In this document: one piece after another, positions 12,752-52,797 of the stretch | Layout: each line of letters opens with the position of its first letter | How positions within the stretch are numbered: the first letter of the stretch is position 1 | Assembly (NCBI GenBank): GCA_002269645.1 | Contig: NIVC01001693.1 | Span: 66,145 to 130,144 of the forward strand | DNA from: Macrostomum lignano | Taxonomy: Eukaryota | Direction: 5' to 3' | DNA: 64,000 bases | Made by a program: the position numbers and the translations under genes | The notes under the pieces: generated by a model | What the model was told of the DNA's origin: nothing | Seen by the model: the letters and a program-made list of their open reading frames with translations, nothing else | Databases searched by the model: none

Positions 12752-13219
12752 GCAACAAGACATTTTGGCAACAGTCACTTTGGCAACAATGTTAGGCCAT
12801 TTTAGCAATTTTTTCAAATATACCTATTTAACAAAATAAAGATGCAGCTGCTGCTTGCTAACTTTGTATATTACAATTAGTAATTAAAGCAGTAAATTAA
12901 ATTAGTAAATTAAATCAATAAGTTTCTAACTGTTGCAACAAAGTTTTTCAATGAAGTACATGACTGACTTATTTTCATTTTACTATTATGGTAAAAATAT
13001 TATCCTTGCGACCTTATTTAAAGTTCATTTTACCTTCAAAATAAATGAATTACAAATATAGATTGCTTGCCAAATCAAGACATTCATAAATTTATATTGC
13101 AGGCCTTTTGCCAAAATGTCTCCTTCTTTTGTCATTGATATGACAATTACTGTTGCCAAAAAATTAATTTGTCCCAAAATTGTTGCCACAAAGTGTCCAT
13201 TGCCAAAATGTCTTGTTGC
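12752..13219. mobile_element. MITE-like element with inverted ends
   Basis: Exact 20-bp inverted pair GCAACAAGACATTTTGGCAA (12752-12771) and TTGCCAAAATGTCTTGTTGC (13200-13219), plus TTGGCAAC subrepeats. TSD not resolved. Confidence 0.55.
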
Positions 13220-13850
13220 CTAAGACTCTGGCTAATGTAATGATTCTTTAAACTTATTTAATTTGATTTGATGTTAATTCAATGTTAATTTATATATACA
13301 TGATTCTATTACTTAAAATTGCTCTATAAGTTATCTCATATGTACTGTGAGCTGGTAAAAAAATATTTCATTTGCATAATTTGTCATTTGACCTGCTATA
13401 TTTGAATATGCTCTATGGAATTTGCACCAAGGCATAATAGTAGACAATCTAGTGCTAATTTCTCTATTAAAAGCATTTATTTGAAGGCAATTTGCCAAAA
13501 TGACTTAAAATGCTAAAATTGTTGTTAGAATGTCTTGTTGCAACATATCCTTTCGTTAAAGTGACTAATAGCCTACTAAAAGGTCTATATATAGATACCA
13601 ATTTGATTTTATGACAATTATTTTTAGTCAAGGTTTGAATAAGAAAGTTTAAATAGGTTTAACTATATATACATAATACATTTAGTCTCTATACTTAACA
13701 GCCAAATACAGCCTTCAGATATGCCACTCAATAGCTGCAGCTAAGCTCTTGGTTGCACATCTGCCCATTAGAGCAGGTGTAATCAATTATTATTATTATT
13801 ATCAGGTACAGTAAATCAAGCTAAACGCTCACTATTATTTCTTCTTCAAG

Positions 13851-14339
13851 GCCTCATCTTCATCAGCCTCCAAACAGGCAGTTAGCCAGGCAGAATTTCT
13901 GCCAGTTGTCCATCGCGTATTTGCTCCTTGGACAGCTGTCAGACTCTTAGTGGAACACCAGGCTGGCGGGCCAGACACACAGGCTAAGGTGGACTGGATG
14001 CAGCAGGCGGTGTGCCATTGGATGCTGGAGAACAGCGCCCTGGCACCAGACGAACTAGCCGAAGTGCTTGAACAGTACATTGACGAGCTGTTTAGCAGTG
14101 TATTTGACGATGGCAGTTGCTACGAGGTTGCCCGCCTACTATGCGACCTGTTAGAGAGGCTGAGACGAGGCGAGACTGCATTCGTTGAAGCCGCCCTGAC
14201 TCGCCTGGCCAGAGGCGTCAGCCTGCAGGCCTGCGTCAGCGCGCCCAGTAGTCAGCAGGATGACGATGATGCCGACGACGGGGACGGCGCTGGCGATGAC
14301 AGCGGAGATGAGCAAGACTATGGCGGGGTGCACGCTTGA
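13851..14339 (+). CDS. TSR2: Pre-rRNA-processing protein TSR2 (single coding exon, no ATG at its 5' end)
   Basis: From 13851: ASSSSASKQAVSQAEFLPVVHRVFAPWTAVRLLVEHQAGGPDTQAKVDWM...ELFSSVFDDGS, which matches the TSR2 WGG domain, followed by an acidic tail. Acceptor TTTCTTCTTCAAG ends at 13850. In-frame TAA at 13812. AATAAA at 14643. Confidence 0.85.
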   Translation, partial: ASSSSASKQAVSQAEFLPVVHRVFAPWTAVRLLVEHQAGGPDTQAKVDWMQQAVCHWMLENSALAPDELAEVLEQYIDELFSSVFDDGSCYEVARLLCDLLERLRRGETAFVEAALTRLARGVSLQACVSAPSSQQDDDDADDGDGAGDDSGDEQDYGGVHA

Positions 14340-14366
14340 TTGGGGTTAGCTGGGCAGAGTTAGTAA

Positions 14367-14560
14367 CGAGGGCTGTCAGAAAAGTTCTGCTTATTGGTGT
14401 GTATCGCCGTCTGTTTAGATCTCAAAAGGACTCGCCAGATCTTAGTCCTTGCGACTGTTTTAATGGAGAAAAGTTAGTGATAGATTCTGGAGGGTATCGT
14501 TTTAACATAACTACTTTGTACTTTACAGACCAATAAGCAGAAATTTTCTGACAGCCCTTG
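14367..14560. mobile_element. Tc1/mariner-type MITE (194 bp) in the TSR2 3' UTR
   Basis: 32-bp TIRs CGAGGGCTGTCAGAAAAGTTCTGCTTATTGGT (14367-14398) and ACCAATAAGCAGAAATTTTCTGACAGCCCTTG (14529-14560), 2 mismatches. TA on the right, AA on the left. Confidence 0.8.
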
Positions 14561-14913
14561 TATAGTGACGTCCCTACACTAGTTTTGACTATTGTTCGCT
14601 TTGCTGAATTGTATATTTTATATTACTGTTTTATTGATGTACAATAAAGCGCTGTCGTATTTTATCTTTGAAAGGCGGATTGTTGCTGTTTTAGTATTGA
14701 GTTTATTCCATTCTTCATTTAATTTAGAATCTGAATAGTTGCTTTTCGAATTTCTAGATAAGCATGTCTAAGTTTTGTAGTCTCCCAGATTCTTAGTTGT
14801 TGGGTGCCCTGCTACCTGGGCAAGTCCTCAGACTTACTGACCCGATCCCAGTTGTGGTGGAAAAATCATTCGAAACGGCATCAAAAAGCAAGATGCAGCA
14901 AATAAGTAAAGAG

Positions 14914-16518
14914 CAGTATTAGACAGTAAAGAAACAGCATTAGGCTGTAAAGAAGCAGCATTAGACAGTAAAGAAGCAGCATTAGGCTGTAAAGAAGCAG
15001 CATTAGGCTGTAAAGAAACAGCATTAGGCTGTAAAGAAGCAGCATTAGGCTGTAAAGAAGCAGCATTAGGCTGTAAAGAAGCAGCATTAGGCTGTAAAGA
15101 AACAACATTAAACAGTAAAGAAACAGCATTAGGCTGTAAATAAACAGCATTAGACAGTAAAGAAGCAGCATTAGGCTGTAAACAAACAGCATTAGACAGT
15201 AAACAAACAGCATTAGGCTGTAAAGAAACAGCATTAAACAGTAAAGAAGCAGCATTAGGCTGTAAAGAAACAGCATTAAACAGTAAAGAAACAGCATTAG
15301 ACTGTAAAGAAGCAGCGTTAACTGTAGATAAACAGCATTAGACAGTAAACAAACAGCATTAGACAGTAAACAAACAGCATTAGACAGTAAACAAACAGCA
15401 TTAGACAGTAAACAAACAGCATTAGACAGTAAACAAACAGCATTAGACAGTAAACAAACAGCATTAGACAGTAAACAAACAGCATTAGGCTGTAAAGAAA
15501 CAGCATTAGACAGTAAAGAAACAGCATTAGGCTGTAAACAAACAGCATTAGACAGTAAAGAAGCAGCATTAGGCTGTAAATAAACAGCATTAGACAGTAA
15601 AGAAGCAGCATTAGGCTGTAAATAAACAGCATTAGACAGTAAAGAAGCAGCATTTGGCTGTAAACAAACAGCATTAGACAGTAAACAAACAGCATTAGGC
15701 TGTAAACAAACAGCATTAGACAGTAAAGAAGCAGCATTAGGCTGTAAACACACAGCATTAGACAGTAAAGAAGCAGCATTAGGCTGTAAACAAACAGCAT
15801 TAGACAGTAAAGAAGCAGCATTAGGCTGTAAACAAACAGCATTAGACAGTAAAGAAGCAGCATTAGGCTGTAAATAAACAGCATTAGACAGTAAAGAAGC
15901 AGCATTAGGCTGTAAATAAACAGCATTAGACAGTAAAGAAGCAGCATTTGGCTGTAAACAAACAGCATTAGACAGTAAACAAACAGCATTAGGCTGTAAA
16001 CAAACAGCATTAGACAGTAAAGAAGCAGCATTAGGCTGTAAACAAACAGCATTAGACAGTAAAGAAGCAGCATTAGGCTGCAAACAAACAGCATTAGACA
16101 GTAAAGTAGCAGCATTAGGCTGTAAACAAACAGCATTAGACAGTAAAGAAGCAGCATTAGGCTGTAAACAAACAGCATTAGACAGTAAACAAACAGCATT
16201 AGGCTGTAAAGAAGCAGTATTAGACTGTAAAGAAGCAGCGTTAACTGTAAATAAACAGCATTAGACAGTAAACAAACAGCATTAGACAGTAAAGAAGCAG
16301 CATTAGGCTGTAAACAAACAGCATTAGACAGTAAACAAACAGCATTAGGCTGTAAAGAAGCAGTATTAGACTGTAAACAAACAGCATTAGACAGTAAAGA
16401 AGCAGCATTAGGCTGTAAACAAACAGCATTAGACAGTAAACAAACAGCATTAGGCTGTAAAGAAGCAGTATTAGACTGTAAACAAACAGCATTAGACAGT
16501 AAACAAACAGCATTAGAC
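14914..16518. repeat. 21-bp minisatellite (CAGCATTAGRCWGTAAASAAR), about 75 copies
   Basis: Directly visible; accounts for the spurious LMLFVYC ORFs. Confidence 0.97.
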
Positions 16519-16565
16519 GGCTAGAAGCCCTCATTTGCTCTCCGCTGCCTCAACCGCTGGCGTCA

Positions 16566-18909
16566 GTGCCGCACCTACACCGGCGCCTGTGCCAGGCCGT
16601 GCTGACCCGCGGCAGCCGTTGGCTCAGTGGCTGCTGCACCCCTAGCAGCGTTGAGCACCGGCCAGCCAAGAATCCTGACGCTCCCAAATCCGCGCCGTTC
16701 TTCGAACCGCAGATCGATTGGGAAAGCCTGTCAGATCCCGTCCGTGCGGCGGCCGCGCGCCAAAATGCGCGCCAACGCGGCGCCGATCCCGATTTAGTTG
16801 ACGCGGCGCTGCGTTTACGCACCGAGTCGTCGGACGGCGCCGCGGCGGTGGCGGCAGCGGCCCGCTTGCCGAACTGGACTCACCCGGACTCGCCCGTTGG
16901 CGGCGAGGCCAACAGCCGGCTGGTTCGCCTGATTGGCACAGCGCCATCGACTGAGGAGCGGCGCGGCTTTGACGCGCGCACTCTGTTGCAGAATCTGAGA
17001 TTGTTGGCGTCCAGAAATCTGTCCTTGCTGACTGGCCAACGGACTCACTATTTTAGAGGCCAGTTAGCACAGCTAGAAACTGCGTTGATTGGACTAGCGC
17101 TGGATGTTGCTCGGGAGTTCGGCTTTCAGCAGGTAGTCATTTTTAATTATTTGTTTTTATTTATGCGTTTGATTTCTTTTTAAATTTTATAATCGCATTC
17201 TAGAATTTCCCAATCACGAGCTTCTAGAATTTCTCAATCACGAGCTTCTAGAATTTCTCAATCACGAGCTTCTAGAATCCCCCGATAATCCCGAGCTTCT
17301 AGAATCCCCCGATAATCCCAAGTTTCTAGAATCCCCCGATAATCCCAAGCTTCTAGAATCCCCCAATAATCCCAAGTTTCTAGAATCCCCCGATAATCCC
17401 AAGCTTCTAGAATCCCCCGATAATCCCAAGTTTCTAGAATCCCCCAATAATCCCAAGTTTCTAGAATCCCCCAATAATCCCAAGTTTCTAGAATCCCCCG
17501 ATAATCCCAAGTTTCTAGAATCCCCCAATAATCCCAAGTTTCTAGAATCCCCGATAATCCCAAGCTTCTAGAATCCCCCGATAATCCCAAGTTTCTAGAA
17601 TCCCCCAATAATCCCAAGTTTCTAGAATCCCCCAATAATCCCAAGTTTCTAGAATCCCCCGATAATCCCAAGTTTCTAGAATCCCCCAATAATCCCAAGT
17701 TTCTAGAATCCCCCGATAATCCCAAGCTTCTAGAATCCCCCGATAATCCCAAGCTTCTAGAATCCCCCAATAATCCCAAGTTTCTAGAATCCCCCAATAA
17801 TCCCAAGCTTCTAGAATCCATGCTAAATAGAATCGCCAAGAAAAGATTTAAACGAAATTAGTCTAAAATTGCTTTCTTAAAAATGCTTATTTGAGTAAGC
17901 ATTTCGCTACTTGCTACTTGTATTTTTGAAAGTAGTATCGCTAGTATATTTCTACGGGATACAATATTTACATCGCTTTTACCAGATTGGCGTGCCCGAA
18001 CTGGTCCCGCCGGAGCTGGTTGACGCGTGCGGCTTTGCGACTCAAGGTACCAGGTCGCAGGTATTTTTAACTGGCTCCATGGCACTGATTGGCACGGCTG
18101 AGATAGCTCTGGCCGGTTACCTGGCTGGCCGCGTCTACCGTATTGACCAGCTGCCTGTGCGCCTCTGCGCCGTGTCACGCTGCTACAGACGGGAGATCTC
18201 TAAAGTTGAGGACGCCATGTACCGCGTGCCGCAGTTTACTAAGGTATGAGATTAGCGGATTAATCATGTTGCGCAGTCTACTACTACTGCTACTACTACT
18301 ACTTTTACTACTACTACTACTACTACTACTACTACAAGCTACAACTATCTACCGAGAAAATGAAGCTCAGCGTACTAGTTTACACCTCCAAAAAACGGCT
18401 TCACCCCCCTTTCCGCCCAGGTGGAGCTGTTCAGCCTGACCTCGCCGGCGGACAGCGAGTCCGAGCACCAGCGCCTGCTGTCAGTGCAGGAGGCCATACT
18501 GAACCAGCTGGGCCTGCACTGCCGCCTATTAGACATGGCCACCGAAGAGTTGGGCAATCCGGCTTATCGCAAATTCGATTGGGAAGCCTGGCTACCATCC
18601 GAGGCCAGGTTTGGCGAAGTCTGCAGCGCTTCCAACTGTACGGATTATCAGAGCCGCAGGCTGGGCATTGGATTAGCTGGTACTAATCTAGGCGGATTTC
18701 CGCACACTCTCAATGGCACGGCTTGTGCAATTACTCGAACTATTAAAGCTCTGGTAGAGACTCATCAATGCTCAGATGGCGGCAGTGTAGCCCTACCGCC
18801 GGCACTGGCGCCCTATATGGCTCCATTTACTAACGAGTTGACCATGCTGAAACGGCCACCAATGAAGTCGATGTATTTTGCTAGACTGAAACGGCAGCCT
18901 ATGCTGTGA
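16566..18909 (+). CDS. SARS2: Mitochondrial seryl-tRNA synthetase; exons ~16566/16596-17132, 17986-18243, 18421-18909
   Basis: LPNWTHPDSPVG, motif 2 CAVSRCYRRE...MYRVPQFTK|VELFSL, EVCSASNCTDYQSRRL and HTLNGTACAITR. Phase-0 GT-AG introns (CAG|GTAGTC, ACCAG|ATT, AAG|GTATGA, CCCAG|GTG). Arg-rich N-terminus like a targeting peptide. Start codon unresolved. Confidence 0.92.
17198..17820. repeat. 27-bp minisatellite (CCCAAGTTTCTAGAATCCCCCGATAAT) in SARS2 intron 1
   Basis: Directly visible tandem array. Confidence 0.95.
18278..18335. repeat. (CTA)n microsatellite in SARS2 intron 2
   Basis: Directly visible. Confidence 0.93.
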
Positions 18910-19106
18910 ATTGCTTGTTTGGCATTTTGAACTTGAAACTGTGTCAGTTTATAGTTTTTATTTATTTGCCATGTGCTGCTATGCTTGATGCGTTAGATGA
19001 TAAAATTATATTATATTGTGTTTGTATGAGTCTTCAAGTTTATTCAACTTGCTTTTTAATTTTGCTAACTCATTTAGCTTAGTTTATTGATTTGTTGAGG
19101 CGAATA

Positions 19107-19290
19107 GGATTGTAGCTTAGTGAAGGGTTGTAGCCGAAAGTCGGGGGTTCGATTCCCAACCAACTCGGAACAAATTGTGTCCTTGAGTAAGACACTTTAC
19201 TCTGCATTGTTGTAAAATGGCTGCCAGCATTAGCTGGGGTAATTGAGGGTATGTGTGTGTGTGGCGACCCCCCCCAGTCCTTGGACTGAA
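19107..19290 (+). mobile_element. tRNA-derived SINE
   Basis: A-box-like TAGCTTAGTGAAG, B-box GGTTCGATTCC (19146-19156), then the TGTGTCCTTGAGTAAGACACTT hairpin resembling the conserved central domain of MetaSINE-type elements. Confidence 0.6.
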
Positions 19291-19329
19291 CAGCAGCCGT
19301 ACGCAGCCTTCAGATGCGCCGCGCAATAG

Positions 19330-19868
19330 CAGAATAGCTCAGTCATTAGCACAGGCACTGAGGCAGAATAGCTCAGTCATTAGCACAGGCACTGAGGCAG
19401 AATAGCTCAGTCATTAGCACAGGCACTGAGGCAGAATAGCTCAGTCATTAGCACAGGCACTGAGGCAGAATAGCTCAGTCATTAGCACAGGCACTGAGGC
19501 AGGATAGCTCAGTCATTAGCACAGGCACTGAGGCAGGATAGCTCAGTCATTAGCACAGGCACTGAGGCAGAATAGCTCAGTCATTAGCACAGGCACTGAG
19601 GCAGAATAGCTCAGTCATTAGCACAGGCACTGAGGCAGAATAGCTCAGTCATTAGCACAGGCACTGAGGCAGAATAGCTCAGTCATTAGCACAGGCACTG
19701 AGGCAGGATAGCTCAGTCATTAGCACAGGCACTGAGGCAGGATAGCTCAGTCATTAGCACAGGCACTGAGGCAGGATAGCTCAGTCATTAGCACAGGCAT
19801 TAAGGCAGGACAGCTCAGTCATTAGCACAGGCACTGAGGCAGGATAGCTCAGTCATTAGCACAGGCAC
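19330..19868. repeat. 34-bp minisatellite (GCAGAATAGCTCAGTCATTAGCACAGGCACTGAG), about 16 copies
   Basis: Directly visible; period measured as 34. Confidence 0.96.
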
Positions 19869-19921
19869 AGCCACCCCGCACACTCTCTGCCCCGCTGCAG
19901 CATCCTTCAACCCCGAGCCCG

Positions 19922-21598
19922 ATGGCGCACTCGCAGGATGCGTCGACCTGGTCCAAGCTGCTGTCGCTCACCTGGTCAGATGCGAATCGGTGGAACATGC
20001 AGCAGCCAACGCCAGCTAATATATTGGACTATTTTTGCGAACGTACAAATCCATTTTACGATCATCACTGCAATAATGAGCAGATTCGAATGCAGAGGCT
20101 TAATCCGGAGCATCTGCTCAGCATGCAAGGTGTTGAGTATGTGCTGCTCCGCTTTCAGGAGCCAATACTCTTTGTTATACGCAAGCAGTTTCGGAAATCA
20201 CCTACTGAGGTAAAAGCTAGTGGATTGTAGAATTATGTAATGAATCATAGCAGCTACTGCAGGAGGAAAAACCGAGATTCTAATATGAGTGTAGTGAAAA
20301 TGAGGGTATAAGGAATGTGAAAGTGTAAATTAAGGGTGTAATGAAGGTATGGGTATAGGGAATAGGTATGGGGAAGGTGAGGGTATAGGGAAGGTGAGGG
20401 TATAGGGAAGGTGAGGGTATAGGGAAGGTGAGGGTATAGGGAAGGTGAGGGTATAGGGAAGGTGAGGGTATAGGGAAGGTGAGGGTATAGGGAAGGTGAG
20501 GTATAGGGAAGGTGAGGGTATAGGGAAGGTGAGGGTATAGGGAAGGTGAGGGTATAGGGAAGGTGAGGGTATAGGGAAGGTGAGGGTATAGGGAAGGTGA
20601 GGGTATAGGGAAGGTGAGGGTATAGGGAAGGTGAGGGTATAGGGAAGGTGAGGGTATAGGGAAGGTGAGGGTATAGGGAAGGTGAGGGTATAGGGAAGGT
20701 GAGGGTATAGGGAAGGTGAGGGTATAGGGAAGGTGAGGGTATAGGGAAGGTGAGGGTATTGGGAAGGTGAGGGTATAGGTATAGGGAAGGTGAGGGTATA
20801 GGAAAAATGAGGGTATTGGGAAAATGAGGGTACAGGGAAGGTGAGGGTGTAGGGAAAATGAGGCTACAGGGAAGGTGAGGGTGTAGGAAAAATGAGGGTA
20901 CAGGGAAGGTGAGGGTATTGGGAAGGTGAGGGTACAGGCAAGGTGAGGGTACAGGCAAGGTGAGGGTACAGGTAAGGTGAGGGTACAGGCAAGGTGAGGG
21001 TACAGGGAAGGTGAGGGTACAGGCAAGGTGAGGGTACAGGCAAGGTGAGGGTACAGGCAAGGTGAGGGTACAGGGAAGGTAAGTGAGTAATTTCGATGAA
21101 GAAATGAAGGTTAAATGGTGCAAACAAAACCCGCAGGTGATACCGCAGTCTCTGTACTACATCATCAACGGTGTAGTGCACGCTGCACCGGACCTTGGTT
21201 CCCTGTTCAACTCGCGCCTGTTAACAACAACATATCACTTGCAGTGCGCGTTCAACTCCTTAAATAGCATTGTTAGGCACCATCCGGACACAGGCTACAG
21301 CTGGGCCACGCCTGGCAGCGGTCAGGGCGACTCTTCTGGTGCCGCTTCTGGCGCCTCAACAGCCGCCGCCACCGCTGCCGCTGCTTCTGGCAAAGCGACC
21401 GGAACTGGAGGCGGTATCAAGAAGGAGAGCAGCGTGTTTCAACGGCAACGAGTTGACGCCCTGCTAAAGGAATGGTCGGCTTTGTTTCCTTCGCCGCATT
21501 TCCAACAGCAGCAGCAACCGCAACAGCAGAAGCAGCAACAGTCTCAGCAACAGAATCAGCAGACGCACAGTGTTAATAAAAAAGCTCCTTCGGCTTAA
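19922..21598 (+). CDS. MED6: Mediator subunit 6; exons 19922-20209 and 21137-21598 (~249 aa)
   Basis: NILDYFCERTNPFYDHHCNNEQIRMQR...GVEYVL...QEPILFVIRKQ and VIPQSLYYIINGVVHAAPDLGSLFNSRL. GAG|GTAAAA donor and CCGCAG|GTG acceptor, both phase 0. AATAAA at 21632. Confidence 0.95.
20345..21080. repeat. 17-bp G-rich minisatellite (AGGGAAGGTGAGGGTAT) in the MED6 intron
   Basis: Directly visible. Confidence 0.96.
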
Positions 21599-21943
21599 TA
21601 CATGCGCTGTTGTGGTTTCTTCAACTTTTATAATAAAACATCTAAAGCTGTAAATGTCTTTGTCTGTTAATAATCAAACTATTACTCTGAACTATAATGA
21701 TGATAATGAAATCATATAATAATTATGATTTTTGTTTGTGTTGTTATTTTGTTATTTTCTATTAATTTAGTAACTTGGTAGCTATCTATTTAGGCAACAA
21801 ACATTTTGGCCTTGTGCAGTCACTGTTGTTAGTGTCCTACTGAAAATGATGTTTAAAAGCAAAAAACACAGCCTAAGATAGCGGCATCCCCTGTGAGCTT
21901 TGGACTGTGACCAACTGACCCTTGGCATCTTTGCAGAAACAGA

Positions 21944-24900
21944 ATGCCGTCAATCAGTTTAGCAAAGAATCCAAGCGAAGCTGCATCGCATCTGTCTGGT
22001 TTGACTCATCAGCATCCGGTCAAGCCGCCTCATCATCACTCCGGATCTGGCGGCTATCGCCTGCTAAGCGATTTAAGCGCGATAGACGGCGCCAAGAAGC
22101 AGTGGCACTCGGAGCCGCCGCCAGTTGTGGCCGCCGTTGCCTACCAGCCGCTTGCCGGAGTGCCAACTTATTCGGGCTGCGTCACATCCATACCCTGCGC
22201 TGTCCGGCTCAGGACTGTCGATTCCGGCTGCTGGGAGCATCTGTCTCAGCCGTCTCCATCTCAGGATGACGCGGCTTTGAACTCGTCCAGCTGCTCAGAC
22301 TGGTGGTGGAAACTCGAACCGCTGCCCGGCTGCCGACAGTCCGTCTCCGCCAGCTCCCTGCTGTCCGCTGATGATGAAGAAATCAAATCGGATTCGGTCA
22401 CGGCTGCGCTTGACGAACGGATCGAACAGCTGGTCAGGGCCAGGGCTAGCGGGCTGGCCGCTGACGAGCTGGCGCCCTACGCTGGAGCGGCTAAAACTAT
22501 TCCTTCTGTTCCCGCCGCCGCTGCTCAGCCATTGACCTCTCAGCTGCCACTGTCTGGCGTCGGCTCGTCCAACCTCATGTCGATGCCGATGCATCTGGAA
22601 GGCGTAGAAGAAGAAGAGGAAGCTGAAGTCGAGGATGATGAAGACGACGAGGCGATGCTGACTGCCGCTTATTCGACTAGGGCTAGACTGGTCAAGTCCC
22701 CTGACAATAAAACTAACAATAAGAGGAAATCTCAGTCTAGAAAGCCAGATATCGATCGTGAATGGTGAGCTAATATATTTCGGGAGACGTGCTACTCACT
22801 TTTTGTACCGTTGCTTTCGGCTATGCTTTGCACCTTATGCCTGCGCGCTTCATTGCTGCGCTTCTACTTGTAACCTTATGCGCGCTTACTGTCTGCGCGC
22901 ATCTACCTATGCGCGCTTACTGTCTGCGCGCTTATACCTATGCGCGCGCTTACTGTCTGCGCGCTTCTACCTATGCGCGCGCTTACTGTCTGCGCGCTTC
23001 TACCTATGCGCGCGCTTACTGTCTGCGCGCATCTACCTATGCGCGCGCTTACTGTCTGCGCGCTTACTGTCTGCGCGCTTCTACCTATGCGCGCGCTTAC
23101 TGTCTGCGCGCTTCTACCTATGCGCGCGCTTACTGTCTGCGCGCTTCTACCTATGCGCGCGCTTACTGTCTGCGCGCTTACTGTCTGCGCGCTTACTGTC
23201 TGCGCGCTTCTACCTATGCGCGCGCTTACTGTCTGCGCGCTTCTACCTATGCGCGCTTACTGTCTGCGCGCCTTTACAAATAGCTACCATCTTGTTTAAC
23301 TGCACGCTTTTTTAAATTGCAAGCTACTGCCTACGCGCATTCGCCCTCATGCGCACTGTGTCAGTTCAGCATAGATGCTGGAATATTCGAACCAGCCAAT
23401 TCTCCCCGTCTCCCTCTCCCAGCCCGCCGGGCATCGCCATGGCGGCCTATCCGCAGCCCATCGGCTACGCTGCCGATGTCGCCGGCGTCCGCCTCCTGCC
23501 GGTGCGCCTGCCGGCGCCTGACGAGGCTCGCCGGCGTCACCTACTGGCCGAGCGCTCGGCCGCTGTCGCCGTAGCCACCGCGGACGCCTCGGCCGCCGAC
23601 TTGGCCGCCGGACTGTCGGCCGCCAGTGGCCGGCCGCGCGAACTCGTGCCCTACGCCGGCTGGACTCTGCGCGAAGTTCAACTGGCCGAGTCCGTGGCCG
23701 ACGCCAATGCAAACGACAATGACGATGACGATTATGATGACGATGAGGCGCCGCGCGCGCACCCGGAGCCGGAGCGCTACCAGCCGTTGACGCAGCTGAC
23801 GCCGTACGCTGGCGGCGAGAAAATCTTGCCTGGCATCGCCTATTCGCCTTTTCTGGTGCGTCAGCAGATGCGGACGCCTCGGTGGCAGCGGCGGAGGCGA
23901 CGGCTGAGCATTGTAGAGCGGCCGCTGAGCGATTGTCGCGTTGACGAGGTACCATTTACCATCCTGCAAAATGATCCCCAATCCTTATCCAGCAACTGAT
24001 CCCCAATCCCCATCCTGCAACTGATCCCCAATCCCCATCCTGCAACTGATCCCCAATCCCCATCCTGCAACTGATCCCCAATCCTTATCCAGAAACTGAT
24101 CCCCAATCCTTATCCAGAAACTGATCCCCAATCCTTATCCTGCAACTGATCCCCAATCCCCATCCTTCAACTGATCCCCAATCCTTATCCTGCAACTGAT
24201 CCCCAATCCTTATCCAGCAACTGATCCCCAATCCTTATCCAGCAACTGATCCCCAATCCCCATCCTGCAACTGATCCCCAATCCTTATCCAGCAACTGAT
24301 CCCCAATCCCCATCCTTCAACTGATCCCCAATCCTTATCCTGCAACTGATCCCCGTCCCCATCCTGCAACTGATCCCCAATCCCCATCCTGCAACTGATC
24401 CCCAATCCCCATCCTGCAACTGATCCCCAATCCCCATCCTGCAACTGATCCCCAATCCCCATCCTGCAACTGATCCCCGTCCCCATTCTGCAACTGATCC
24501 CCGTCCCCATTCTGCAACTGATCCCCAATCCCCATCCTGCAACTGATCCCCAATCCCCATCCTGCAACTGATCCCCGTCCCCATTCTGCAACTGATCCCC
24601 GTCCCCATTCTGCAACTGATCCCCAATCCCCATCCTGCAACTGATCCCCAATCCCCATCCTGCAACTGATCCCCAATCCCCATCCTGCAACTGATCCCCG
24701 TCCCCATTCTGCAACTGATCCCCGTCCCGATCCTGCAACTGATCCCCAATCCTTATCCTGCAACTGATCCCCAATCCCCATCCTGCAACTGATCCCCGTC
24801 CCGATCCTGCAACTGATCCCCAATCCTTATCCTGCAACTGATCCCCAATCCCCATCCTGCAACTGATCCCCGTCCCCATTCTGCAACTGATCCCCAATTC

Positions 24901-25454
24901 TCCCACTGCAGGCGGTCCTACTGAATCAGCGAATCTTCATGCTGCTGCCGGACTTGCTGTTCGACGACCTGAAAGACCTGCTGCCCACCGTGATCACTGT
25001 TGATAGCCCTGACGGTCGGGCTCCGCTGCCGCCCAGTCTCTCAGCTTCCTCGTCAAGCGCACCGAAACCGGTTACCATGGCAACGCTGGCCCGGCATAGG
25101 TCGGCCAGGCCGCCGCTATGCGACACGGTGCGCCAGAACGGCATGGAGCTGGCTTTGCTGCGCATTGGGGACGCGGCCTTCGCCTGCGACCTTCGCTGTC
25201 CCCACGCCGGCGGGCCGATGAACTTTGGCCAGCTGGTTAACGACTACAATGGCGACTGTCTGCTGCGCTGTCCGTGGCACGGCTATACGTTTAATCTGTT
25301 TGCCAATGGCGAGATTCACTCGCCCAGTTCTCGCACCGACTTGCGTCTGCGAATGTACCCGGTGGAACGGGACCAGCTGGGCCGCCTGTACATCGGCTAC
25401 GATCAGCTTAGCAAGCTGTGGTTTTCTTATACTCCGGCTGAAGAATTGTTTTAA
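21944..25454 (+). CDS. Predicted ~629-aa protein: low-complexity N-terminus plus C-terminal RFESD-like Rieske [2Fe-2S] domain; exons 21944-22764, 23423-23948, 24912-25454
   Basis: Donor TG|GTGAGC (phase 2), acceptor TCTCCCTCTCCCAG|C, donor GAG|GTACC (phase 0), acceptor CCCACTGCAG|GCG; all phases are compatible. LxPYAG motif is shared by exons 1 and 2. Rieske ligands CPHAGGP...CPWHGYTF resemble human RFESD (CYHSGGP...CPWH). Confidence 0.7.
22878..23272. repeat. 33-bp CpG-rich minisatellite (ATGCGCGCGCTTACTGTCTGCGCGCTTCTACCT) in intron 1 of the Rieske gene
   Basis: Directly visible, with 15-bp subunit variants. Confidence 0.93.
23960..24898. repeat. 25-bp minisatellite (CAACTGATCCCCAATCCCCATCCTG) filling intron 2 of the Rieske gene
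   Basis: Directly visible. Confidence 0.96.
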
Positions 25455-25545
25455 AACTGCGGCCTCCTTGGCGCTTTGTTTGTGTCCTTTGTCAAATGGG
25501 AACTTTTATAGCATTCCCCAGGACTCTTGCTTCTGCGTCACCGTT

Positions 25546-26297
25546 AGATGACACCTCCAGCTTCATCTCTGGATGATGGTCCTCCAGCTTTATCTCTGGA
25601 TGATGGTTCTCCAGCTTCATCTCTGGATGATGATCCTCCAGCTTCATCTCTGGATAATGGCTCTCCAGCTTCATCTCTGGATAATGGCTCTCCAGCTTCA
25701 TCTCTTGATGATGATTCCCCAGCTTCATCTCTTGATGATGATTCCCCAGCTTCATCCCTGGATAATTATATCCTCCAGCTTCATCTCTGGATGATGGTCC
25801 TCCAGCTTCATCTCTGGATGATGGTCCTACAGCTTCATCTCTGGATGATGGTCCTCCAGCTTCATCTCTAGATGATGGTTCTCCAGCTTCATCTCTTGAT
25901 GATGATTCTGGAGCTTCATCTCTGGATGATGATTCTGGAGCTTCATCTCTGGATGATGATCCTCCAGCTTCATCTCTGGATAATGAATGGCTCTCCAGCT
26001 TCATCTCTGCAGATAGTGGCTCTCCAGCTTCATCTCTGGATAATGGCTCTCCAGCTTCATCCCTGGATAATTATCCTCCGGCTTCATCTTTGATGATGGT
26101 CCTACAGCTTCATCTCTGGATGATTATTCTCCAGCTTCATCTCTAGAATATGATTCTCAGGTTCATCTCTGGACGATGATTCTCCAGCTTCATCTCTGGG
26201 TGATGGTTCTCCAGCTTTATCTCTGGATGATGGTTCTCCAGCTTCATCTCTGGATGATGATTCTCAAGCTTCATCTCTGGATGATGATCCTCCAGCA
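25546..26297. repeat. 27-bp minisatellite (CTCCAGCTTCATCTCTGGATGATGGTC) downstream of the Rieske stop codon
   Basis: Directly visible. Confidence 0.95.
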
Positions 26298-27081
26298 TTA
26301 CGCTTAATTTGCCAAATATTTTAACAGTTTATAGCATTATACTTTGCTTTTTGTGTGCATTTCTATTTCAAAATCTTTATTAGCCTGCGAAAGCTTCAAA
26401 AAAGTAACTTAGCATTTTTATGTATATTCTTTGTCGCCTACTGTAGTCTATTGTTTACATTAAATTTGCTTTTTGTCATTCAAAACATTGGTGCAATTTT
26501 TACAATTATCTCAATATATTTGAGTCATTTTCCTACTTTAAGTAGTTAATAAAGTTGCCGATTTGTTTGTTAGTTTGTAATATTCTTTGTTACATTAAAA
26601 GAACTTGCCTATTCGCTGTTTGAAATTGTTTCTATACATGTCGGTTTAGCCGACATCTCTAGTTTATTATTAGCAATTTTCATGATCTCATATTTTATTT
26701 CTGACATTTCTCGTCCTACTAACTACTTAAATTGCGTATCAAGTAGGAAATTACGAGTGGCCTTGTCATAAAAAGAATTAATTCATTATTTTCATTGCAA
26801 TATTTGTAGTGAAATATTTGTAATCTGCAATAATCAAGTGGCATTTTTAACCACCCTGCGCTGTTTTCTATACATTACTTTGCGTTTATTTTTATCTCAT
26901 TTTTCTATCGATGCAGCCATTTCTGCCAAAGTAAAAAGTCTGATAGGTTTGCTAATAGGCTAAAAAATTAATTTTACTATGCCAACATTGCCTTTCATTT
27001 CAGCCTCAGTTTGAACTAATCCAAGTAGTTAATCGAGGACAAAGATTCGATTCAGACACCCGCATTTAACTTTTATCGGCC

Positions 27082-30000
27082 ATGTTCGGCGGCACTTCTA
27101 GCGGCTCCGCCTTCAACTTCGGCGCCAGCGCGGCGCCTGCCGCTGCTACAACATCTGCGTTCAGCTTCCCAACCGCTGCCACCACGGCCACATCCGGTTT
27201 TGGATTTTCCGCACCTGCCGCCACGACTGCCACTTCCGGTTTCGGATTTGCCGCTCCGGCCGCCTCTACGGCCACTTCCGGTTTCGGATTTGCCGCTCCG
27301 GCCGCCTCTACGGCCCCTTCCGGTTTCGGATTTGCCGCTCCGGCCGCCTCTACGGCCACTTCCGGTTTCGGATTTGCCGCACCGTCCGCCTCTACGGCCA
27401 CTTCCGGTTTCGGATTTGCCGCACCGTCCGCCTCTACGGCCACTTCCGGTTTTGGATTTGCCGCACCGTCCGCCTCTACGGCCACTTCCGGTTTCGGATT
27501 TGCCGCACCGGCCGCCTCTACGGCCACTTCCGGTTTCGGATTTGCCGCACCGGCCGCCTCTGCTGCCACTTCCGGTTTCGCGTTCCCCGCTCCGGCGGGC
27601 GGCGCCGCAACTTCGGCACCATTTGGATTTGGCAAACCGGCCGGCGCCGCCGTCTCTTCCGCCGCCTCATTTGGCGCCGGATTTGGCGCGGCCGGTAAGC
27701 TCACGCTTGGCGCCTTTGGCCAGACTGCCGGAGTTGCTACGTCGGCTGCGGCCTCCGCCGCGAGCAGCGTGGCTTTCTTTGCTAGTCTGACTCAGCCGGC
27801 GCTGTTTCCTGACGAGCGGGACTCCGTGCTGGCCCGGTGGAATCAACTGCAGGTGTGATTTATCTGCGCTACCGGAAGTTGATGTACAATTCTGACCAAC
27901 TGTCTTGACGAACCCTTTGACCGGAAGCTAATTTCCAGCTCATCTTAATAACCTGAAGCTGTATTAACAAGCTTCCCAATAACCGGAAGCTAGATTGACA
28001 GACATCCCAATGACCGGAAGCTAGATTGACAGACATTCCAATAACCGGAAGCTAGATTTACAAGGATCCCAATGACCAGAAGCTAGATTGACAGACATCC
28101 CAATGACCGGAAGCTAGATTGACATACATCCCAATGATTGGAAGCTAGATTGACAGATATCCCAATAACCGGAAGCTAGATTTACAAGGATCCCAATGAC
28201 CGAAAGCTACATTTAAAAGAATCCGGAAGCTAGATTGACAGACATCCCAATGACCGGAAGCTAGATTGACAGATATCCCAATAACCGGAAGCTAGTTTAC
28301 AAGGATCCCAATGACCGGAAGCTACATTTAAAAGCATCCCAATAACCGGAAGCTAGATTGACAGACATCCCAATGACCGGAAGCTAGATTGACAAGCATC
28401 CCAATGACCGGAAGCTAGATTGACAGATATCCCAATAACCGGAAGCTAGATTTACAAGGATCCCAATGACCGGAAGCTACATTTAAAAGAATCCCAATAG
28501 CCGGAAGCTAGATTGACAGACATCCCAATGACCGGAAGCTAGATTTACAAGGATCCCAATGACCGGAAGCTAGATTTACAAGGATCCCAATGACCGGAAG
28601 CTAGATTGGCAAGCATCCCAATGACCGGAAGCTAGATTGACAAGCATTCCAATGACCGGAAGCTATGTTGCCAAACATCCCAATGACCGGAAGCTATGTT
28701 GCCAAACATCCCAATGACCGGAAGCTATGTTGCCAAACATCCCAATGACCGGAAGCTATGTTGCCAAACATCCCAATGACCGGAAGCTATGTTGCCAAAC
28801 ATCCCAATGACCGGAAGCTAGATTGGCAAGCCATTCGCATAAAATTAACAACCAAAATGTGTAAAATCCCCACTACAGGAAGTTGTCCCCATACTCGCAC
28901 CCTCCGCAGGCGCAGTGGGGCGCCGGCAAAGGTTTTTGCTCGCAGGGCCCCGTGGAGTACCAGCCGGGAAACCCGTTCTGCCGGCTGAAATCCGTCTGCT
29001 ACAACGCCCTGCCAGCCGCCAAAGATGAGGACGGCCTGGTCGGCCTGACGGTGACCAAAGCGGCCACCGAGATTGCCGAGACCGGCGTCAAGGACGCGCT
29101 ATTTCGGTTGCTAGGCAACAAGCCCAATTTGACGCCGCATATTGAAGAGATTCGAGCGCTGGGCGAGAAGCTCTGCCAGTTGGTGGTGTACATTCGCGAG
29201 CAGCTGCCGACTGGCGGCGCCAGGCGGATTCTCAGCACCGAGCTGGCTGCCTATCTGTCCCAGCCAATGAACAAACAGCAGCTGTCTACTCAACTGCAGG
29301 TCACCGCTGTGCAGGCTCTGGTAAGCGACTCTGATGCTTTTCTAATAATAACAATGTTTACAGCTTAAGGATCGGCCAATAATCTGCTTCAAATCGCCCA
29401 AAACTTATCCCAACCCGCCTCTGACAATCGCTTCAAACCCCTGACAATCGCATTCAAACCCCTGACAATCGCTTCAAACCCCTGACAATCGCTTCAAACC
29501 CCTGACAATCGCTTCAAACCCCTGACAATCGCTTCAAACCCCTGACAATCGCTTCAAACCCCTGACAATCGCTTCAAACCCCTGACAATCGCTTCAAACC
29601 CCTGACAATCGCATTCAAACCCCTGACAATCGCTTTAAACTCCTGACAATCGCTTCAAACTCCTGACAATCGCATTCAAACCCCTGACAATCGCTTCAAA
29701 CCCCTGACAATCGCTTCAAACCCCTGACAATCGCTTCAAACCCCTGACAATCGCATTCAAACCCCTGACAATCGCTTCAAACCCCTGACAATCGCTTCAA
29801 ACCCGCCCATGACAATCGCTTTAAACACGCCCCTGACAATCGCATTCAAACCCCTGACAATCACATTCAAACCCCTGACAATCGCTTCAAACCCCTGACA
29901 ATCGCTTCAAACCCCTGACAATCACATTCAAACCCCTGACAATCGCATTCAAACCCCTGACAATCGCATTCAAACCCCTGACAATCGCATTCAAACCTCC

Positions 30001-30741
30001 AAGAGTCGCTTCATGCCCGCCTTTGACAGCGCCTGTCCCTAACCTAAGCCTAAGCCTAACCCGCCCCCATCGCTGCAGACGCGGCCCAGCCGGGACCAGC
30101 TGACGCAGTACCTGGACCGTCCAGCGGCCGGCGTACCGCTGATGGTGTGGCAGCAGGCCAGGCGCGAGAACCCCGACCCGGAGTCGCTCCTGCCGGTGCC
30201 TCTGGTCGGCCTGGAGCAGGCGCAGGCCCGAATGTCCGCACAGCGAGCCCAGTGCCAGGCCCAGCAACGGTTGCTAGGGACGCTGGCAGCCCGTTGCGAA
30301 CGGCTGCGGGTTGAACAGGCGGCCTCGTCCGCTCGCCTGGACGCGGCCAAGCGCCGCCAGCTGGAGCTCGGCCGCCGGGCCGTCCGCCTGCTGTGCCGCC
30401 AGGAGTCGGCCAGGCGGCCGGGCCAGACTCTGCTGCCCAGGGAGGAGCAGCTCCGGTCCGCTGTTGAGCAACTGCTCACCCAGCTGCCCACTGGCCGGCT
30501 GCGCGAGCTCGCCAGCCAGGTGAAACTCGGCGTCCGCCCGGCCGATCGGGACTCCGCCGGCGGCGGCTCGGCGCCTGTTGCCGTCTCCGCCTCGTCGTCA
30601 GGCGGCCTGCTATTGGATGCCCCCAGTCTCGATGCCGTGATGACTCACCTGGCTGGGCAGCATCGCTCCGTTGGCGAGCTGGTCCGCCTGACCAACGTTC
30701 TGGCTCGCGATCTGGACACTGTGCAGGCCGGACTTGGTTGA
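27082..30741 (+). CDS. NUP54: Nucleoporin Nup54; exons 27082-27852, 28910-29320, 30079-30741 (~614 aa)
   Basis: FG-repeat N-terminus; DERDSVLARWNQLQ|AQWGAGKG matches human DERDAILAKWNQLQAFWGTGKG; NPFCRLK, KDEDGLV, VWQQARRENPDPESLLPVPLVG. Phase-0 GT-AG introns. Confidence 0.96.
27925..28830. repeat. ~31-bp minisatellite (CCGGAAGCTAGATTGACAGACATCCCAATGA) in NUP54 intron 1
   Basis: Directly visible. Confidence 0.95.
29422..29997. repeat. 20/21-bp minisatellite (CAAACCCCTGACAATCGCTT) in NUP54 intron 2
   Basis: Directly visible. Confidence 0.95.
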
Positions 30742-30777
30742 CTGAAGCATCTCTTCACCAATCTCTCACTTACCGTA

Positions 30778-31010
30778 GAATCCGCATAGCAACTAAAGCA
30801 ATCCGCATAGCAACTAGAGCCCTAGAATCCGCATAGCAACTGAGCAATTCGCATAGCAACTGAGCAATACGCATAGCAACTAGAGCCCTAGAATCCGCAA
30901 AGCAACTAGAGCAATACGCAAGCAACTAGAGCCCTAGAATCCGCATAGCAACTGGAGCCTTAGAATCCGCATAGCAGCTAGAGCCCTATAATCCGCATAG
31001 CAACTAGAGG
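30778..31010. repeat. Degenerate ~26-bp repeat (GAATCCGCATAGCAACTAGAGCCCTA) just after the NUP54 stop
   Basis: Directly visible, with variable unit length. Confidence 0.85.
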
Positions 31011-31764
31011 CCATAGTAACAAAGATATTAAGGAAAGTTTAAAGTACTAAAATACCTGTACAGAAATTGAACATTGATTCTTGCGTTGTATGGTTGTTTT
31101 TGCTTTCTCGGGCTAACAATTTCCGTCATATTATGTGTTCCCTGCGTGGGTTGCGTGGAATTCGATTCAATAGTCACACTGGGAGCATATTGTTGCGCAA
31201 ATATATATTTTTAACTGTCGTTTCATTGCCGATTCGCTTAGTGAATAATCATCAAAACAAATATAAGTTTATACTTACACAGTGCAACAAACATGAAACC
31301 AGCCTTCGGTCAGTGCATTTTGAGTTCTACCAAAAATTCAAAAAACTAGTTTTTCGCTTAGAATATTCAGTGCTAGTTTTTTTATTTCGTAAAATTTAGC
31401 TTGATAAAAAATGTCTATCATACTACTAATCGAAGAATGCAAAGCGCGTTTAACTCAATGAACTAAATACTTGCATTATAAGGACATGTAAATTTGCTTA
31501 TGTTATTCTGTCATTGCTGTTTATGGCTTGATATTTTATATTTGATGTTATTATATGTAAACTTAAAGTTTGGCGCAAATTGAAGAAAAAACTATAAAAG
31601 TTACATGTATTACACAACATATCGGCATACTAAAATTATGCAGCAAGTATTGTATTTTAGCGAAATAAAAGCCTGCTGCAGCTACTGTGAAGAGAAAAAA
31701 AATTGTTCCCCGTGCAATGCTCAGCGTTTAATTAGGATTTAAACATTTTTGAAAAAATAAATCT

Positions 31765-31846
31765 CGACGAGGATGGGATTCGAACCCACGCGGGGAAACC
31801 CCAATGGATTAGCAGTCCATCGCCATAACCACTCGGCCACCTCGTC
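31765..31846 (-). tRNA. tRNA-Ser (anticodon GCT)
   Basis: GACGAGGTGGCCGAGTGGTTATGGCGATGGACTGCTAATCCATTGGGGTTTCCCCGCGTGGGTTCGAATCCCATCCTCGTCG, 82 nt, long variable arm, near-identical to the metazoan Ser-GCT consensus; oligo-T Pol III terminator downstream. Confidence 0.97.

Positions 31847-36431: not shown

Positions 36432-52797
<16,366 letters not shown>

What the first reader, a model, noticed from the sequence alone, without database searches (positions are those of the whole stretch)
13851..30741. Candidate five-gene polycistronic operon: TSR2-SARS2-MED6-Rieske-NUP54
Seen: five co-directional, mostly housekeeping genes in 17 kb. MED6 stop (21598) > AATAAA (21632) > U-rich tract > TTTGCAG acceptor (21936) > next ATG (21944) spans only 346 bp. 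Each gene has a splice acceptor just before its coding start (13850, 16595, 19900, 21936, 27055). The MED6 acceptor CCCCGCTGCAG is also in frame with its ATG (21 nt). The non-repeat spacer between genes is at most about 0.9 kb. Established: SL trans-splicing resolves operons in nematodes, tunicates and flatworms. Inference: one primary transcript is cut into monocistronic mRNAs, and minisatellites have inflated the intercistronic spacers.
Basis: partly seen in the sequence, partly recalled or inferred. Interest (0 to 1): 0.75.

Follow-up and report, generated by a model that had tools for sequence, protein, structure and literature searches.

The report
Flatworm spliced-leader operon, already a known kind
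This is a cluster of five same-strand housekeeping genes in the flatworm Macrostomum lignano that fits the trans-spliced operons with repeat-swollen spacers already published for this species, so it is a correct reading of a known phenomenon, not a discovery.

Summary
The window is the last 64 kb of Macrostomum lignano scaffold NIVC01001693.1 (assembly Mlig_3_7). Five + strand genes lie at 13851-30741: TSR2, mitochondrial SerRS, MED6, an RFESD-like Rieske protein and NUP54. My exon models reproduce the GenBank proteins exactly.

M. lignano has one 35-nt spliced leader (SL) ending in AUG. About 15% of its genes are published as operonic, defined by same-strand trans-spliced neighbours with repeat-subtracted spacers under 1 kb. 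All four spacers here qualify: 338-859 nt from stop to acceptor, roughly 150-480 nt from predicted poly(A) sites. The same minisatellites sit in three genomic copies at very different lengths, for example 816, 1613 and 4984 bp.

GenBank gene-name prefixes derive from RNA-seq transcriptional units. They link TSR2+SerRS, SerRS+MED6 and Rieske+NUP54, but not MED6 to Rieske.

SerRS has no genomic ATG in any copy, and its frame opens at acceptor 16595, so the SL AUG must start it. Two corrections apply:
- The TSR2 "acceptor" AAG at 13850 is ATG in both other copies.
- The NUP54 acceptor at 27055 is weak, and 27003 is the better candidate.

No SL-read or promoter data were reachable. A single five-gene transcript therefore remains unproven (about 0.45).

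Novelty: already known. Interest: low.

The parts
12587..13847 (+). Upstream region shared by all three copies of the locus. Candidate promoter plus outron or 5'UTR of the first gene (inferred only).
   Evidence: blastn against L002 and L003: homology runs from window 12587 to about 13848 and is lost further upstream. No annotated gene lies within 10 kb upstream.
13848..13850 (+). It is ATG, a genomic start codon, in both other copies.
   Evidence: Alignment A3. Pyrimidine tract 0.8 directly upstream.
13851..14339 (+). TSR2 coding exon. There is no ATG in this copy before codon ~49.
   Evidence: Pfam WGG/TSR2 5.5e-21. The stop-to-stop ORF 13815-14336 has no early Met. The GenBank CDS is 160 aa, partial.
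14643..14648 (+). AATAAA, the likely TSR2 poly(A) signal.
   Evidence: Pattern scan.
14906..16518 (+). 21/42-bp minisatellite in the TSR2-SerRS spacer: 1613 bp here, 4984 bp and 816 bp in the other copies.
   Evidence: TRF.
16594..16595 (+). SerRS trans-splice acceptor (CCAG|GCC). It is the only AG upstream of the CDS that puts the SL AUG in the SerRS frame without an intervening stop.
   Evidence: Acceptor and frame scan. The 77 nt upstream are 100% identical in all copies.
16596..18909 (+). Mitochondrial seryl-tRNA synthetase. Exons 16596-17132, 17986-18243 and 18421-18909. There is no genomic ATG before residue ~210.
19329..19868 (+). 34-bp minisatellite in the SerRS-MED6 spacer (540, 575 and 744 bp in the three copies).
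   Evidence: TRF.
19899..19900 (+). MED6 acceptor CTGCAG. It matches the published YTNCAG motif, and an SL AUG would be in frame 21 nt before the genomic ATG at 19922.
19901..21598 (+). MED6. Exons 19901-20209 (ATG at 19922) and 21137-21598.
   Evidence: Pfam Med6 3.1e-36. Exact match to PAA65015.1.
21632..21637 (+). AATAAA after MED6. It reads AATGAA in the two other copies.
21935..21936 (+). Rieske-gene acceptor TTGCAG. It matches YTNCAG and is conserved in all copies. An SL AUG would be out of frame and open a 111-codon overlapping ORF.
21944..25454 (+). RFESD-like Rieske-domain protein. Exons 21944-22764, 23423-23948 and 24912-25454.
   Evidence: Pfam Rieske 4.9e-08. Best solved relative is 3D89, Rieske domain-containing protein, 3.7e-09. 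Exact match to PAA65016.1.
25555..26296 (+). 27-bp minisatellite after the Rieske stop (742, 169 and 1282 bp in the three copies). It probably lies inside the 3'UTR.
   Evidence: TRF. The first AATAAA after the stop is at 26548.
27002..27003 (+). Better NUP54 acceptor candidate, TTTCAG: pyrimidine tract 0.75, and the SL AUG would give a 22-codon ORF that ends before the genomic ATG.
   Evidence: Conserved in all copies.
27054..27055 (+).
27082..30741 (+). NUP54. Exons 27082-27852, 28910-29320 and 30079-30741.
   Evidence: Pfam Nup54 2.4e-25. Exact match to PAA65017.1.
31765..31846 (-). tRNA-Ser(GCU) on the opposite strand. It marks the downstream limit of the same-strand cluster.
   Evidence: ARAGORN. 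Rfam tRNA 64.3 bits.

Best explanation
The region is a Macrostomum lignano spliced-leader operon cluster. Five same-strand housekeeping genes are transcribed as one polycistronic precursor, or as two adjacent ones: TSR2-SerRS-MED6 and Rieske-NUP54.

Each upstream mRNA is released by cleavage and polyadenylation. Each downstream mRNA receives the single 35-nt M. lignano SL (ending in AUG) at an acceptor just before its coding region.

For SerRS in all copies, and for TSR2 in this copy, the SL also supplies the start codon. The spacers and every intron carry unstable minisatellites that lengthen the DNA without changing the short non-repeat spacers.

Shown here:
- species, gene identities and exon structures;
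- spacer lengths with and without repeats;
- length variation of the repeat arrays between copies;
- absence of a genomic ATG in SerRS.

Taken from published work:
- the SL sequence and the operon criterion;
- the rule that gene-name prefixes come from clusters of assembled transcriptional units.

Inferred:
- actual SL addition at these acceptors;
- co-transcription of the genes;
- the position of the promoter.
For: - Species and locus: 100% hit to an M. lignano protein and contig NIVC01001693.1.
- Same strand with no intervening opposite-strand gene. No annotated gene lies within 10 kb upstream. tRNA-Ser and PTEN lie on the minus strand downstream.
- Published background: a single SL ending in ATG, 30% of genes trans-spliced, 15% in operons, repeats inflating operon spacers, and a threshold of 1 kb after repeat subtraction (PMC8629364).
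- Spacers here after subtracting tandem repeats are 643, 451, 338 and 859 nt from stop to acceptor. From the predicted poly(A) site they are about 314, 279 and 430-482 nt.
- SerRS: the frame is open from the acceptor, with no ATG until residue ~210. Only the AG at 16595 puts the SL AUG in frame. This holds in three copies and in models from two assemblies, all flagged partial.
- The flatworm SL AUG is a documented initiator (PMC9851317 citing Cheng et al. 2006; PMC12582326).
- Name prefixes come from clusters of assembled transcriptional units that 'often represented precursor mRNA'. Unrelated neighbouring genes share prefixes: TSR2/SerRS Mlig004933, SerRS/MED6 Mlig012582, Rieske/NUP54 Mlig014252.
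- The MED6 and Rieske acceptors match the published YTNCAG motif.
- The same arrays sit at the same sites in three copies with lengths differing up to six-fold.
Against: - No SL-junction reads, poly(A) reads, transcription-start data or long reads were reachable, so co-transcription is indirect.
- MED6 to Rieske has no shared unit prefix in any of the three copies, although it has no repeat to break an assembly.
- Predicted poly(A)-to-acceptor distances (about 150-480 nt) are several times the published mode of about 100 bp. AT-rich spacers of 340-860 nt could hold promoters.
- About 60% of trans-spliced M. lignano genes are not in operons.
- The TSR2 'acceptor' is a start-codon position in the other copies.
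- An SL AUG at the Rieske acceptor would open an overlapping out-of-frame ORF.
- GenBank CDS 5' ends are ragged and do not sit at AGs, so they cannot confirm the sites.
- SerRS has no canonical poly(A) hexamer in its spacer.
Confidence: 0.7

Rival explanations
1. Five independent transcription units. Each gene, or most of them, has its own promoter in the AT-rich spacer upstream. SL trans-splicing only trims an outron and, for SerRS, donates the AUG. The shared orientation and proximity are coincidence or a loose housekeeping neighbourhood.
For: - Most trans-spliced M. lignano genes are monocistronic.
- The non-repeat spacers are 338-859 nt and 32-43% GC, long enough for a compact promoter.
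- Proximal regions of up to 2 kb suffice for expression in M. lignano transgenes.
- Five genes in one orientation is only a 1/16 event.
- Acceptor-like sites are common, about 8 per kb.
Against: - Unrelated neighbouring genes share transcriptional-unit name prefixes at three of the four junctions.
- All four repeat-adjusted spacers fall under the published operon threshold.
- GenBank SerRS models run 18-33 nt upstream of the acceptor, so the spacer next to the acceptor is transcribed.
Confidence: 0.2
2. Two adjacent operons instead of one. TSR2-SerRS-MED6 is one precursor. Rieske-NUP54 is a second, with its own promoter in the 340-bp MED6-Rieske spacer.
For: - Unit prefixes link genes within each group but never across MED6 and Rieske in any of three copies, although that spacer is repeat-free and easy to assemble.
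- That spacer is the most diverged between copies (88% identity, 21 gaps), and its AATAAA reads AATGAA in two copies.
Against: - This is the shortest spacer (about 279 nt from poly(A) signal to acceptor), and it has a conserved YTNCAG acceptor.
- Fast processing could remove the bridging RNA, so a missing assembled precursor is weak evidence.
- The published authors note that RNA-seq units under-call operons.
Confidence: 0.3
3. The ATG-less 5' ends reflect missed cis-spliced first exons, not SL-donated start codons. The minisatellite-bearing 'spacer' upstream of SerRS would then be a first intron, like every other intron in this locus.
For: - Every intron here carries a minisatellite, as the spacers do.
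- The 21-bp repeat unit contains GTAAAG/GTAAAC donor-like strings.
Against: - Three RNA-seq-guided gene models and two models from an older assembly all lack an upstream exon and are flagged partial. They extend unspliced past the acceptor.
- The one ATG followed by a donor-like site that I examined by eye before the array (ATGCAGCAAATAA|GTAAAG, about 14893-14911) would join out of frame.
- The SL ends in AUG, and AG|GCC gives a good AUGG context.
Confidence: 0.05

Closest known systems
Macrostomum lignano SL operons (Wudarski et al. 2017, PMC5730564; Ustyantsev & Berezikov 2021, PMC8629364)
   Same: Same species and assembly. Same single 35-nt SL ending in AUG. Same-strand conserved housekeeping genes. 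Spacers lengthened by simple repeats, with repeat-subtracted spacers under 1 kb. Acceptors of YTNCAG type. Gene names cut out of multi-gene transcriptional units.
   Different: Nothing different in kind. With five genes it would be in the large-size tail (75% of published operons have two genes, 18% have three, and the maximum is nine). Its predicted poly(A)-to-acceptor spacers (about 150-480 nt) are longer than the published mode of about 100 bp. I found no paper text naming these gene IDs.
Caenorhabditis elegans SL2-type operons
   Same: One promoter, with 3' end formation of the upstream gene coupled to trans-splicing of the downstream gene. Enriched in housekeeping genes. Two to eight genes, with spacers of about 100 bp in the commonest case (as summarised in PMC8629364).
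   Different: C. elegans uses a specialised SL2 for downstream genes, whereas M. lignano has a single SL. The nematode SL does not end in an AUG used as initiator. Nematode spacers are not filled with kilobase minisatellites.
Parasitic flatworm operons and SL-AUG donation (Schistosoma, Echinococcus; PMC12582326; Cheng et al. 2006 as cited in PMC9851317)
   Same: Same phylum. The SL ends in AUG followed by GU. The SL AUG is in frame in a fraction of mRNAs and is required as initiator by some. Chimeric gene models are taken as signs of polycistronic precursors; here UniProt A0A1I8I6U8 fuses Rieske and NUP54.
   Different: Operon candidates there are defined with spacers of 300 bp or less and are few. 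No conserved gene order with this locus could be shown: the Dicrocoelium MED6 has no neighbour within 10 kb.
Tunicate operons (Ciona, Oikopleura)
   Same: A single SL type resolves polycistrons of housekeeping genes.
   Different: Tunicate operons have almost no intercistronic spacer (my own knowledge, not tested here). Here the spacers are 0.3-2.3 kb of DNA, and up to 5.6 kb in another copy.

Membership tests
M. lignano SL-resolved operon (criteria of Ustyantsev & Berezikov 2021) | Immediately adjacent genes on the same strand, not interrupted by an opposite-strand gene. | tested here: met
   The GenBank gene calls around the locus show five consecutive + strand genes. The only RNA gene nearby, tRNA-Ser, lies downstream on the minus strand.
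M. lignano SL-resolved operon (criteria of Ustyantsev & Berezikov 2021) | Repeat-subtracted intergenic distance below 1000 bp. | tested here: met
   643, 451, 338 and 859 nt from stop to acceptor after TRF subtraction. About 314, 279 and 430-482 nt from predicted poly(A) sites. Only tandem repeats were subtracted, and the poly(A) sites are predicted, not measured.
M. lignano SL-resolved operon (criteria of Ustyantsev & Berezikov 2021) | Downstream genes carry the SL (SL-containing reads at the first-exon acceptor). | tested here: inconclusive
   No read data were reachable. Indirect support is strong for SerRS (no ATG in three copies, frame opens at the AG). The motif matches for MED6 and Rieske. 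The NUP54 site is uncertain (27003 versus 27055). The TSR2 site is polymorphic, AAG versus ATG.
Operon in the strict sense (one promoter, one primary transcript) | A precursor RNA spans consecutive genes, with a single transcription start. | tested here: inconclusive
   Shared transcriptional-unit name prefixes link three of the four junctions in at least one copy. MED6 to Rieske is not linked. No transcription-start or chromatin data were available.
C. elegans-type SL2 operon | A specialised downstream spliced leader (SL2), distinct from the SL used at first genes. | tested here: not met
   From the literature, not from the sequence. M. lignano has one 35-nt SL sequence on all trans-spliced mRNAs (PMC8629364). 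No SL RNA gene lies in the window.
Flatworm mRNAs that need the SL 3'-terminal AUG as initiator (Cheng et al. 2006) | No genomic start codon, with the open frame starting at the trans-splice acceptor in phase with the SL AUG. | tested here: met
   SerRS meets it in all copies. TSR2 meets it only in the window copy. The other two copies have a genomic ATG at that position.

The most novel reading that the evidence does not exclude
At TSR2 a single T/A difference between genomic copies switches the same three bases between a genome-encoded start codon (ATG|GCC in two copies) and a 3' splice site (AAG|GCC in this copy) preceded by a strong pyrimidine tract. Because the flatworm SL ends in AUG, trans-splicing at the AAG would rebuild exactly the same N-terminus (M-A-S-S-S-S). 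If the window copy is spliced there and is functional, this is a one-step evolutionary route between SL-independent and SL-dependent start codons, caught as a difference between copies in a recent polyploid. It could also mean that many '5'-partial' CDSs in the GenBank annotation are in fact complete.
Probability: 0.25. Interest if true: 0.45.

Novelty: already known. Interest (0 to 1): 0.2.

Why it matters
The cluster would be among the larger M. lignano operons.

It also offers three copies of one locus whose intercistronic arrays range from 0.2 to 5 kb. That makes it a natural test of how far RNA polymerase II can travel past a poly(A) site through repeats and still feed a downstream trans-splice site.

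Two genes illustrate dependence on the SL's AUG:
- SerRS lacks a genomic start codon in every copy.
- TSR2 carries ATG in two copies and AAG in this one.

This dependence affects how 'partial' gene models in this genome should be read. None of this changes current understanding.

Tried and rejected
- SL sequence in the window (up to 3 mismatches): no hit, so no SL RNA gene lies here.
- Rfam over the whole window: only tRNA-Ser. A permissive scan of the SerRS-MED6 spacer found only a T-arm-like 13-mer.
- Paper full-text search for Mlig004933, Mlig012582, Mlig014252 and Mlig026491: no paper. Supplements of three M. lignano papers: nothing held or no hit.
- Gene order outside the species:
  - The MED6 homologue search found no close Macrostomum relatives.
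  - The best Logan hit is a 1-kb AT-rich transcript from an unknown organism with no recognisable M. lignano SL.
  - The Dicrocoelium MED6 spans 77 kb with no neighbour within 10 kb.
- Conservation among the three copies as a guide to functional spacer elements: the copies are 88-100% identical, too close to be informative.
- GenBank CDS 5' ends as proxies for trans-splice sites: rejected. They are ragged between copies (SerRS 438, 434 and 433 aa; Rieske 631 and 622 aa) and not preceded by AG.
- The chimeric UniProt model A0A1I8I6U8 (Rieske + NUP54 + sequence from downstream of NUP54, overlapping the PTEN gene region) as evidence for a precursor: treated as a prediction artefact.
- The bacterial promoter/terminator scanner was not used, because it does not apply to this organism.
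- The third large protein search was not spent on TSR2. The MED6 search had already shown no close relatives in the collection.

Full report
**Source of the window.** The spliced SerRS model from the window is 100% identical over its full length to GenBank protein BOX15_Mlig004933g1 of Macrostomum lignano. The protein lies on contig NIVC01001693.1 of assembly GCA_002269645.1 (Mlig_3_7, 130,144 bp). The fetched locus L001 is identical to the window from position 6563, so record position equals window position plus 66144. The window is therefore the last 64 kb of that contig.

**The five genes.** Six-frame ORFs and GT-AG junctions gave these models:

| Gene | Coding exons (window coordinates) |
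|---|---|
| TSR2 | 13851-14339 |
| Mitochondrial SerRS | 16596-17132, 17986-18243, 18421-18909 |
| MED6 | 19901 (ATG at 19922)-20209, 21137-21598 |
| Rieske-domain protein | 21944-22764, 23423-23948, 24912-25454 |
| NUP54 | 27082-27852, 28910-29320, 30079-30741 |

Pfam confirms all five identities. The Rieske domain is closest to the solved RFESD-type protein 3D89. Translations of these models, trimmed to the GenBank starts, were found by exact look-up in the protein collection, which verifies the exon structures.

**Surroundings.**
- No gene is annotated within 10 kb upstream of TSR2.
- A hAT transposase remnant lies at 4299-6665 on the minus strand.
- Downstream come tRNA-Ser(GCU) at 31765-31846 (minus strand) and a PTEN gene from 36432 to beyond the end of the fetched locus at 40741 (minus strand).
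- A CCCH zinc-finger ORF follows at 57526-59052 (minus strand).
- The same-strand cluster is therefore exactly these five genes.

**Checking the observation.**
- The MED6 to Rieske details are exact: stop at 21598, AATAAA at 21632, TTTGCAG ending at 21936, ATG at 21944.
- The non-repeat spacers are 643, 451, 338 and 859 nt.
- AG dinucleotides are present at all five stated positions.
- Acceptor-like sites occur about 8 per kb on this strand, so their presence alone carries no weight. Five genes in one orientation is a 1/16 event.
- Tandem arrays occupy about 42% of the non-coding part of 13851-30741. They sit in every intron as well as in three of the four spacers.

**What is published for this organism.**
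- M. lignano adds one 35-nt SL, CGGTCTCTTACTGCGAAGACTCAATTTATTGCATG, to about 30% of its genes. About 15% of genes are assigned to operons.
- The published work found that subtracting repeats from intergenic distances uncovers a peak near 100 bp between trans-spliced genes. It concluded that repeats lengthen operon spacers and set 1 kb after repeat subtraction as the operon criterion.
- The top motif at trans-splice acceptors is [T/C]TNCAG (PMC8629364).
- The genome paper describes assembled 'transcriptional units' that often were multi-gene precursors and were cut into genes using SL-read and poly(A) signals. Units clustered at 95% identity received the same name prefix (PMC5730564).

**How this locus scores.** All four spacers pass the published distance rule.

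Name prefixes tie unrelated neighbouring genes together:
- Mlig004933 covers SerRS in the window, and TSR2 plus SerRS on contig NIVC01000521.
- Mlig012582 covers MED6 in the window and SerRS on NIVC01002257.
- Mlig014252 covers Rieske and NUP54 in the window.

By the naming rule, genes without sequence similarity can share a prefix only if they were cut from one unit or from clustered units. This is indirect evidence for precursors across three junctions. MED6 to Rieske shares no prefix in any copy, although it is the only spacer without a repeat.

**Start codons.**
- SerRS: the frame is open from 16503. It has no ATG until about residue 210, inside the catalytic core. The only upstream AG that places the SL's AUG in frame without a stop is 16594-16595, giving M-A-V-L-T-R-G-S-R-W, a plausible mitochondrial presequence. 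The 77 nt before the acceptor are identical in all three copies. Five deposited models from two assemblies all lack a start codon. Use of the flatworm SL AUG as initiator is established (PMC9851317 citing Cheng et al. 2006; PMC12582326).
- MED6: the SL AUG would be in frame 21 nt upstream of a genomic ATG.
- Rieske: the SL AUG would be out of frame and would open a 111-codon overlapping ORF.
TTTCAG at 27003 gives a 22-codon ORF that ends before the ATG. Both sites are conserved in all copies.

**The TSR2 site.** In the alignment of the three copies, the window reads TTCTTCTTCAAG|GCC where both other copies read TTCTTCTTCATGGCC.

In this copy TSR2 has no ATG before codon ~49, inside the WGG domain. 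It is therefore one of two things:
- a start-loss copy, tolerated in a genome with extra copies; or
- a copy rescued by the SL AUG, spliced at 13850 (pyrimidine tract 0.8) or at the in-frame AAG ending at 13820.

The direction of the change cannot be decided without an outgroup. An assembly error at this base cannot be excluded either.

**Minisatellites.** The same arrays, with the same unit at the same place, occur in all three copies with very different lengths:

| Array | Window | L002 | L003 |
|---|---|---|---|
| TSR2-SerRS spacer | 1613 bp | 4984 bp | 816 bp |
| SerRS-MED6 spacer | 540 bp | 575 bp | 744 bp |
| Rieske-NUP54 spacer | 742 bp | 169 bp | 1282 bp |
| Rieske intron 2 | 940 bp | 296 bp | 197 bp |

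The flanking unique sequence is 88-100% identical between copies. Inflation of the spacers by unstable arrays is therefore directly supported. Some of the length differences could reflect assembly uncertainty.

**Verdict.**
- I put about 0.7 on polycistronic transcription of at least parts of the cluster.
- I put about 0.45 on a single five-gene unit.
- I put about 0.3 on two units split between MED6 and Rieske.
- I put about 0.2 on fully independent promoters.

Noticed in passing
window 13848-13850 versus L002 3884-3886 and L003 8034-8036 (approximate): TSR2 has AAG in the window copy where both other copies have the start codon ATG. The same three bases are either a start codon or an AG acceptor that would receive the SL's AUG.
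   Followed up: partly
window 31765-31846 (-): A tRNA-Ser(GCU) gene lies 1 kb downstream of a cluster that includes the mitochondrial seryl-tRNA synthetase. This is probably coincidence.
   Followed up: no
window 14366-14403 and 14524-14561: A 38-bp inverted repeat (92% identical) flanks about 120 nt inside the TSR2 3'UTR. It looks like a small MITE-type insertion or a long hairpin.
   Followed up: no
window 19097-19170: A tRNA-like fragment with a perfect T-arm (GGGTTCGATTCCC at 19145-19157) lies in the SerRS-MED6 spacer. It is possibly the head of a SINE. It is not called as a tRNA by ARAGORN or by Rfam.
   Followed up: partly
window 27184-27580: A coding 42-bp tandem repeat encodes the FG repeats of NUP54 (units of 14 residues, consensus ATSGFGFAAPAAST). 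Its length is 397, 344 and 397 bp in the three copies.
   Followed up: no
window 21632-21637 versus L002 and L003: The MED6 poly(A) hexamer AATAAA reads AATGAA in both other copies. This spacer is the most diverged between copies (88% identity).
   Followed up: no
window 14906-16518: Every unit of the 21-bp spacer repeat contains a donor-like GTAAAG or GTAAAC and a CAG. The array is a long run of splice-site-like strings just upstream of a trans-splice acceptor.
   Followed up: no
window 4299-6665 (-): Two long ORFs (222 and 566 aa) lie here, and the shorter one has a weak hAT dimerisation-domain hit. This is probably a hAT transposon remnant, and it is not annotated in GenBank.
   Followed up: partly
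UniProt A0A1I8I6U8 (P0137), covering window about 22000-38200: An older gene model of 1387 aa fuses the Rieske gene, NUP54 and sequence from downstream of NUP54 that overlaps the PTEN gene region. It is a chimeric prediction.
   Followed up: partly
window 30040-30065: A short run of telomere-like hexamers (CCTAAG/CCTAAC; the reverse complement reads TTAGGC/TTAGGG) lies inside NUP54 intron 2.
   Followed up: no
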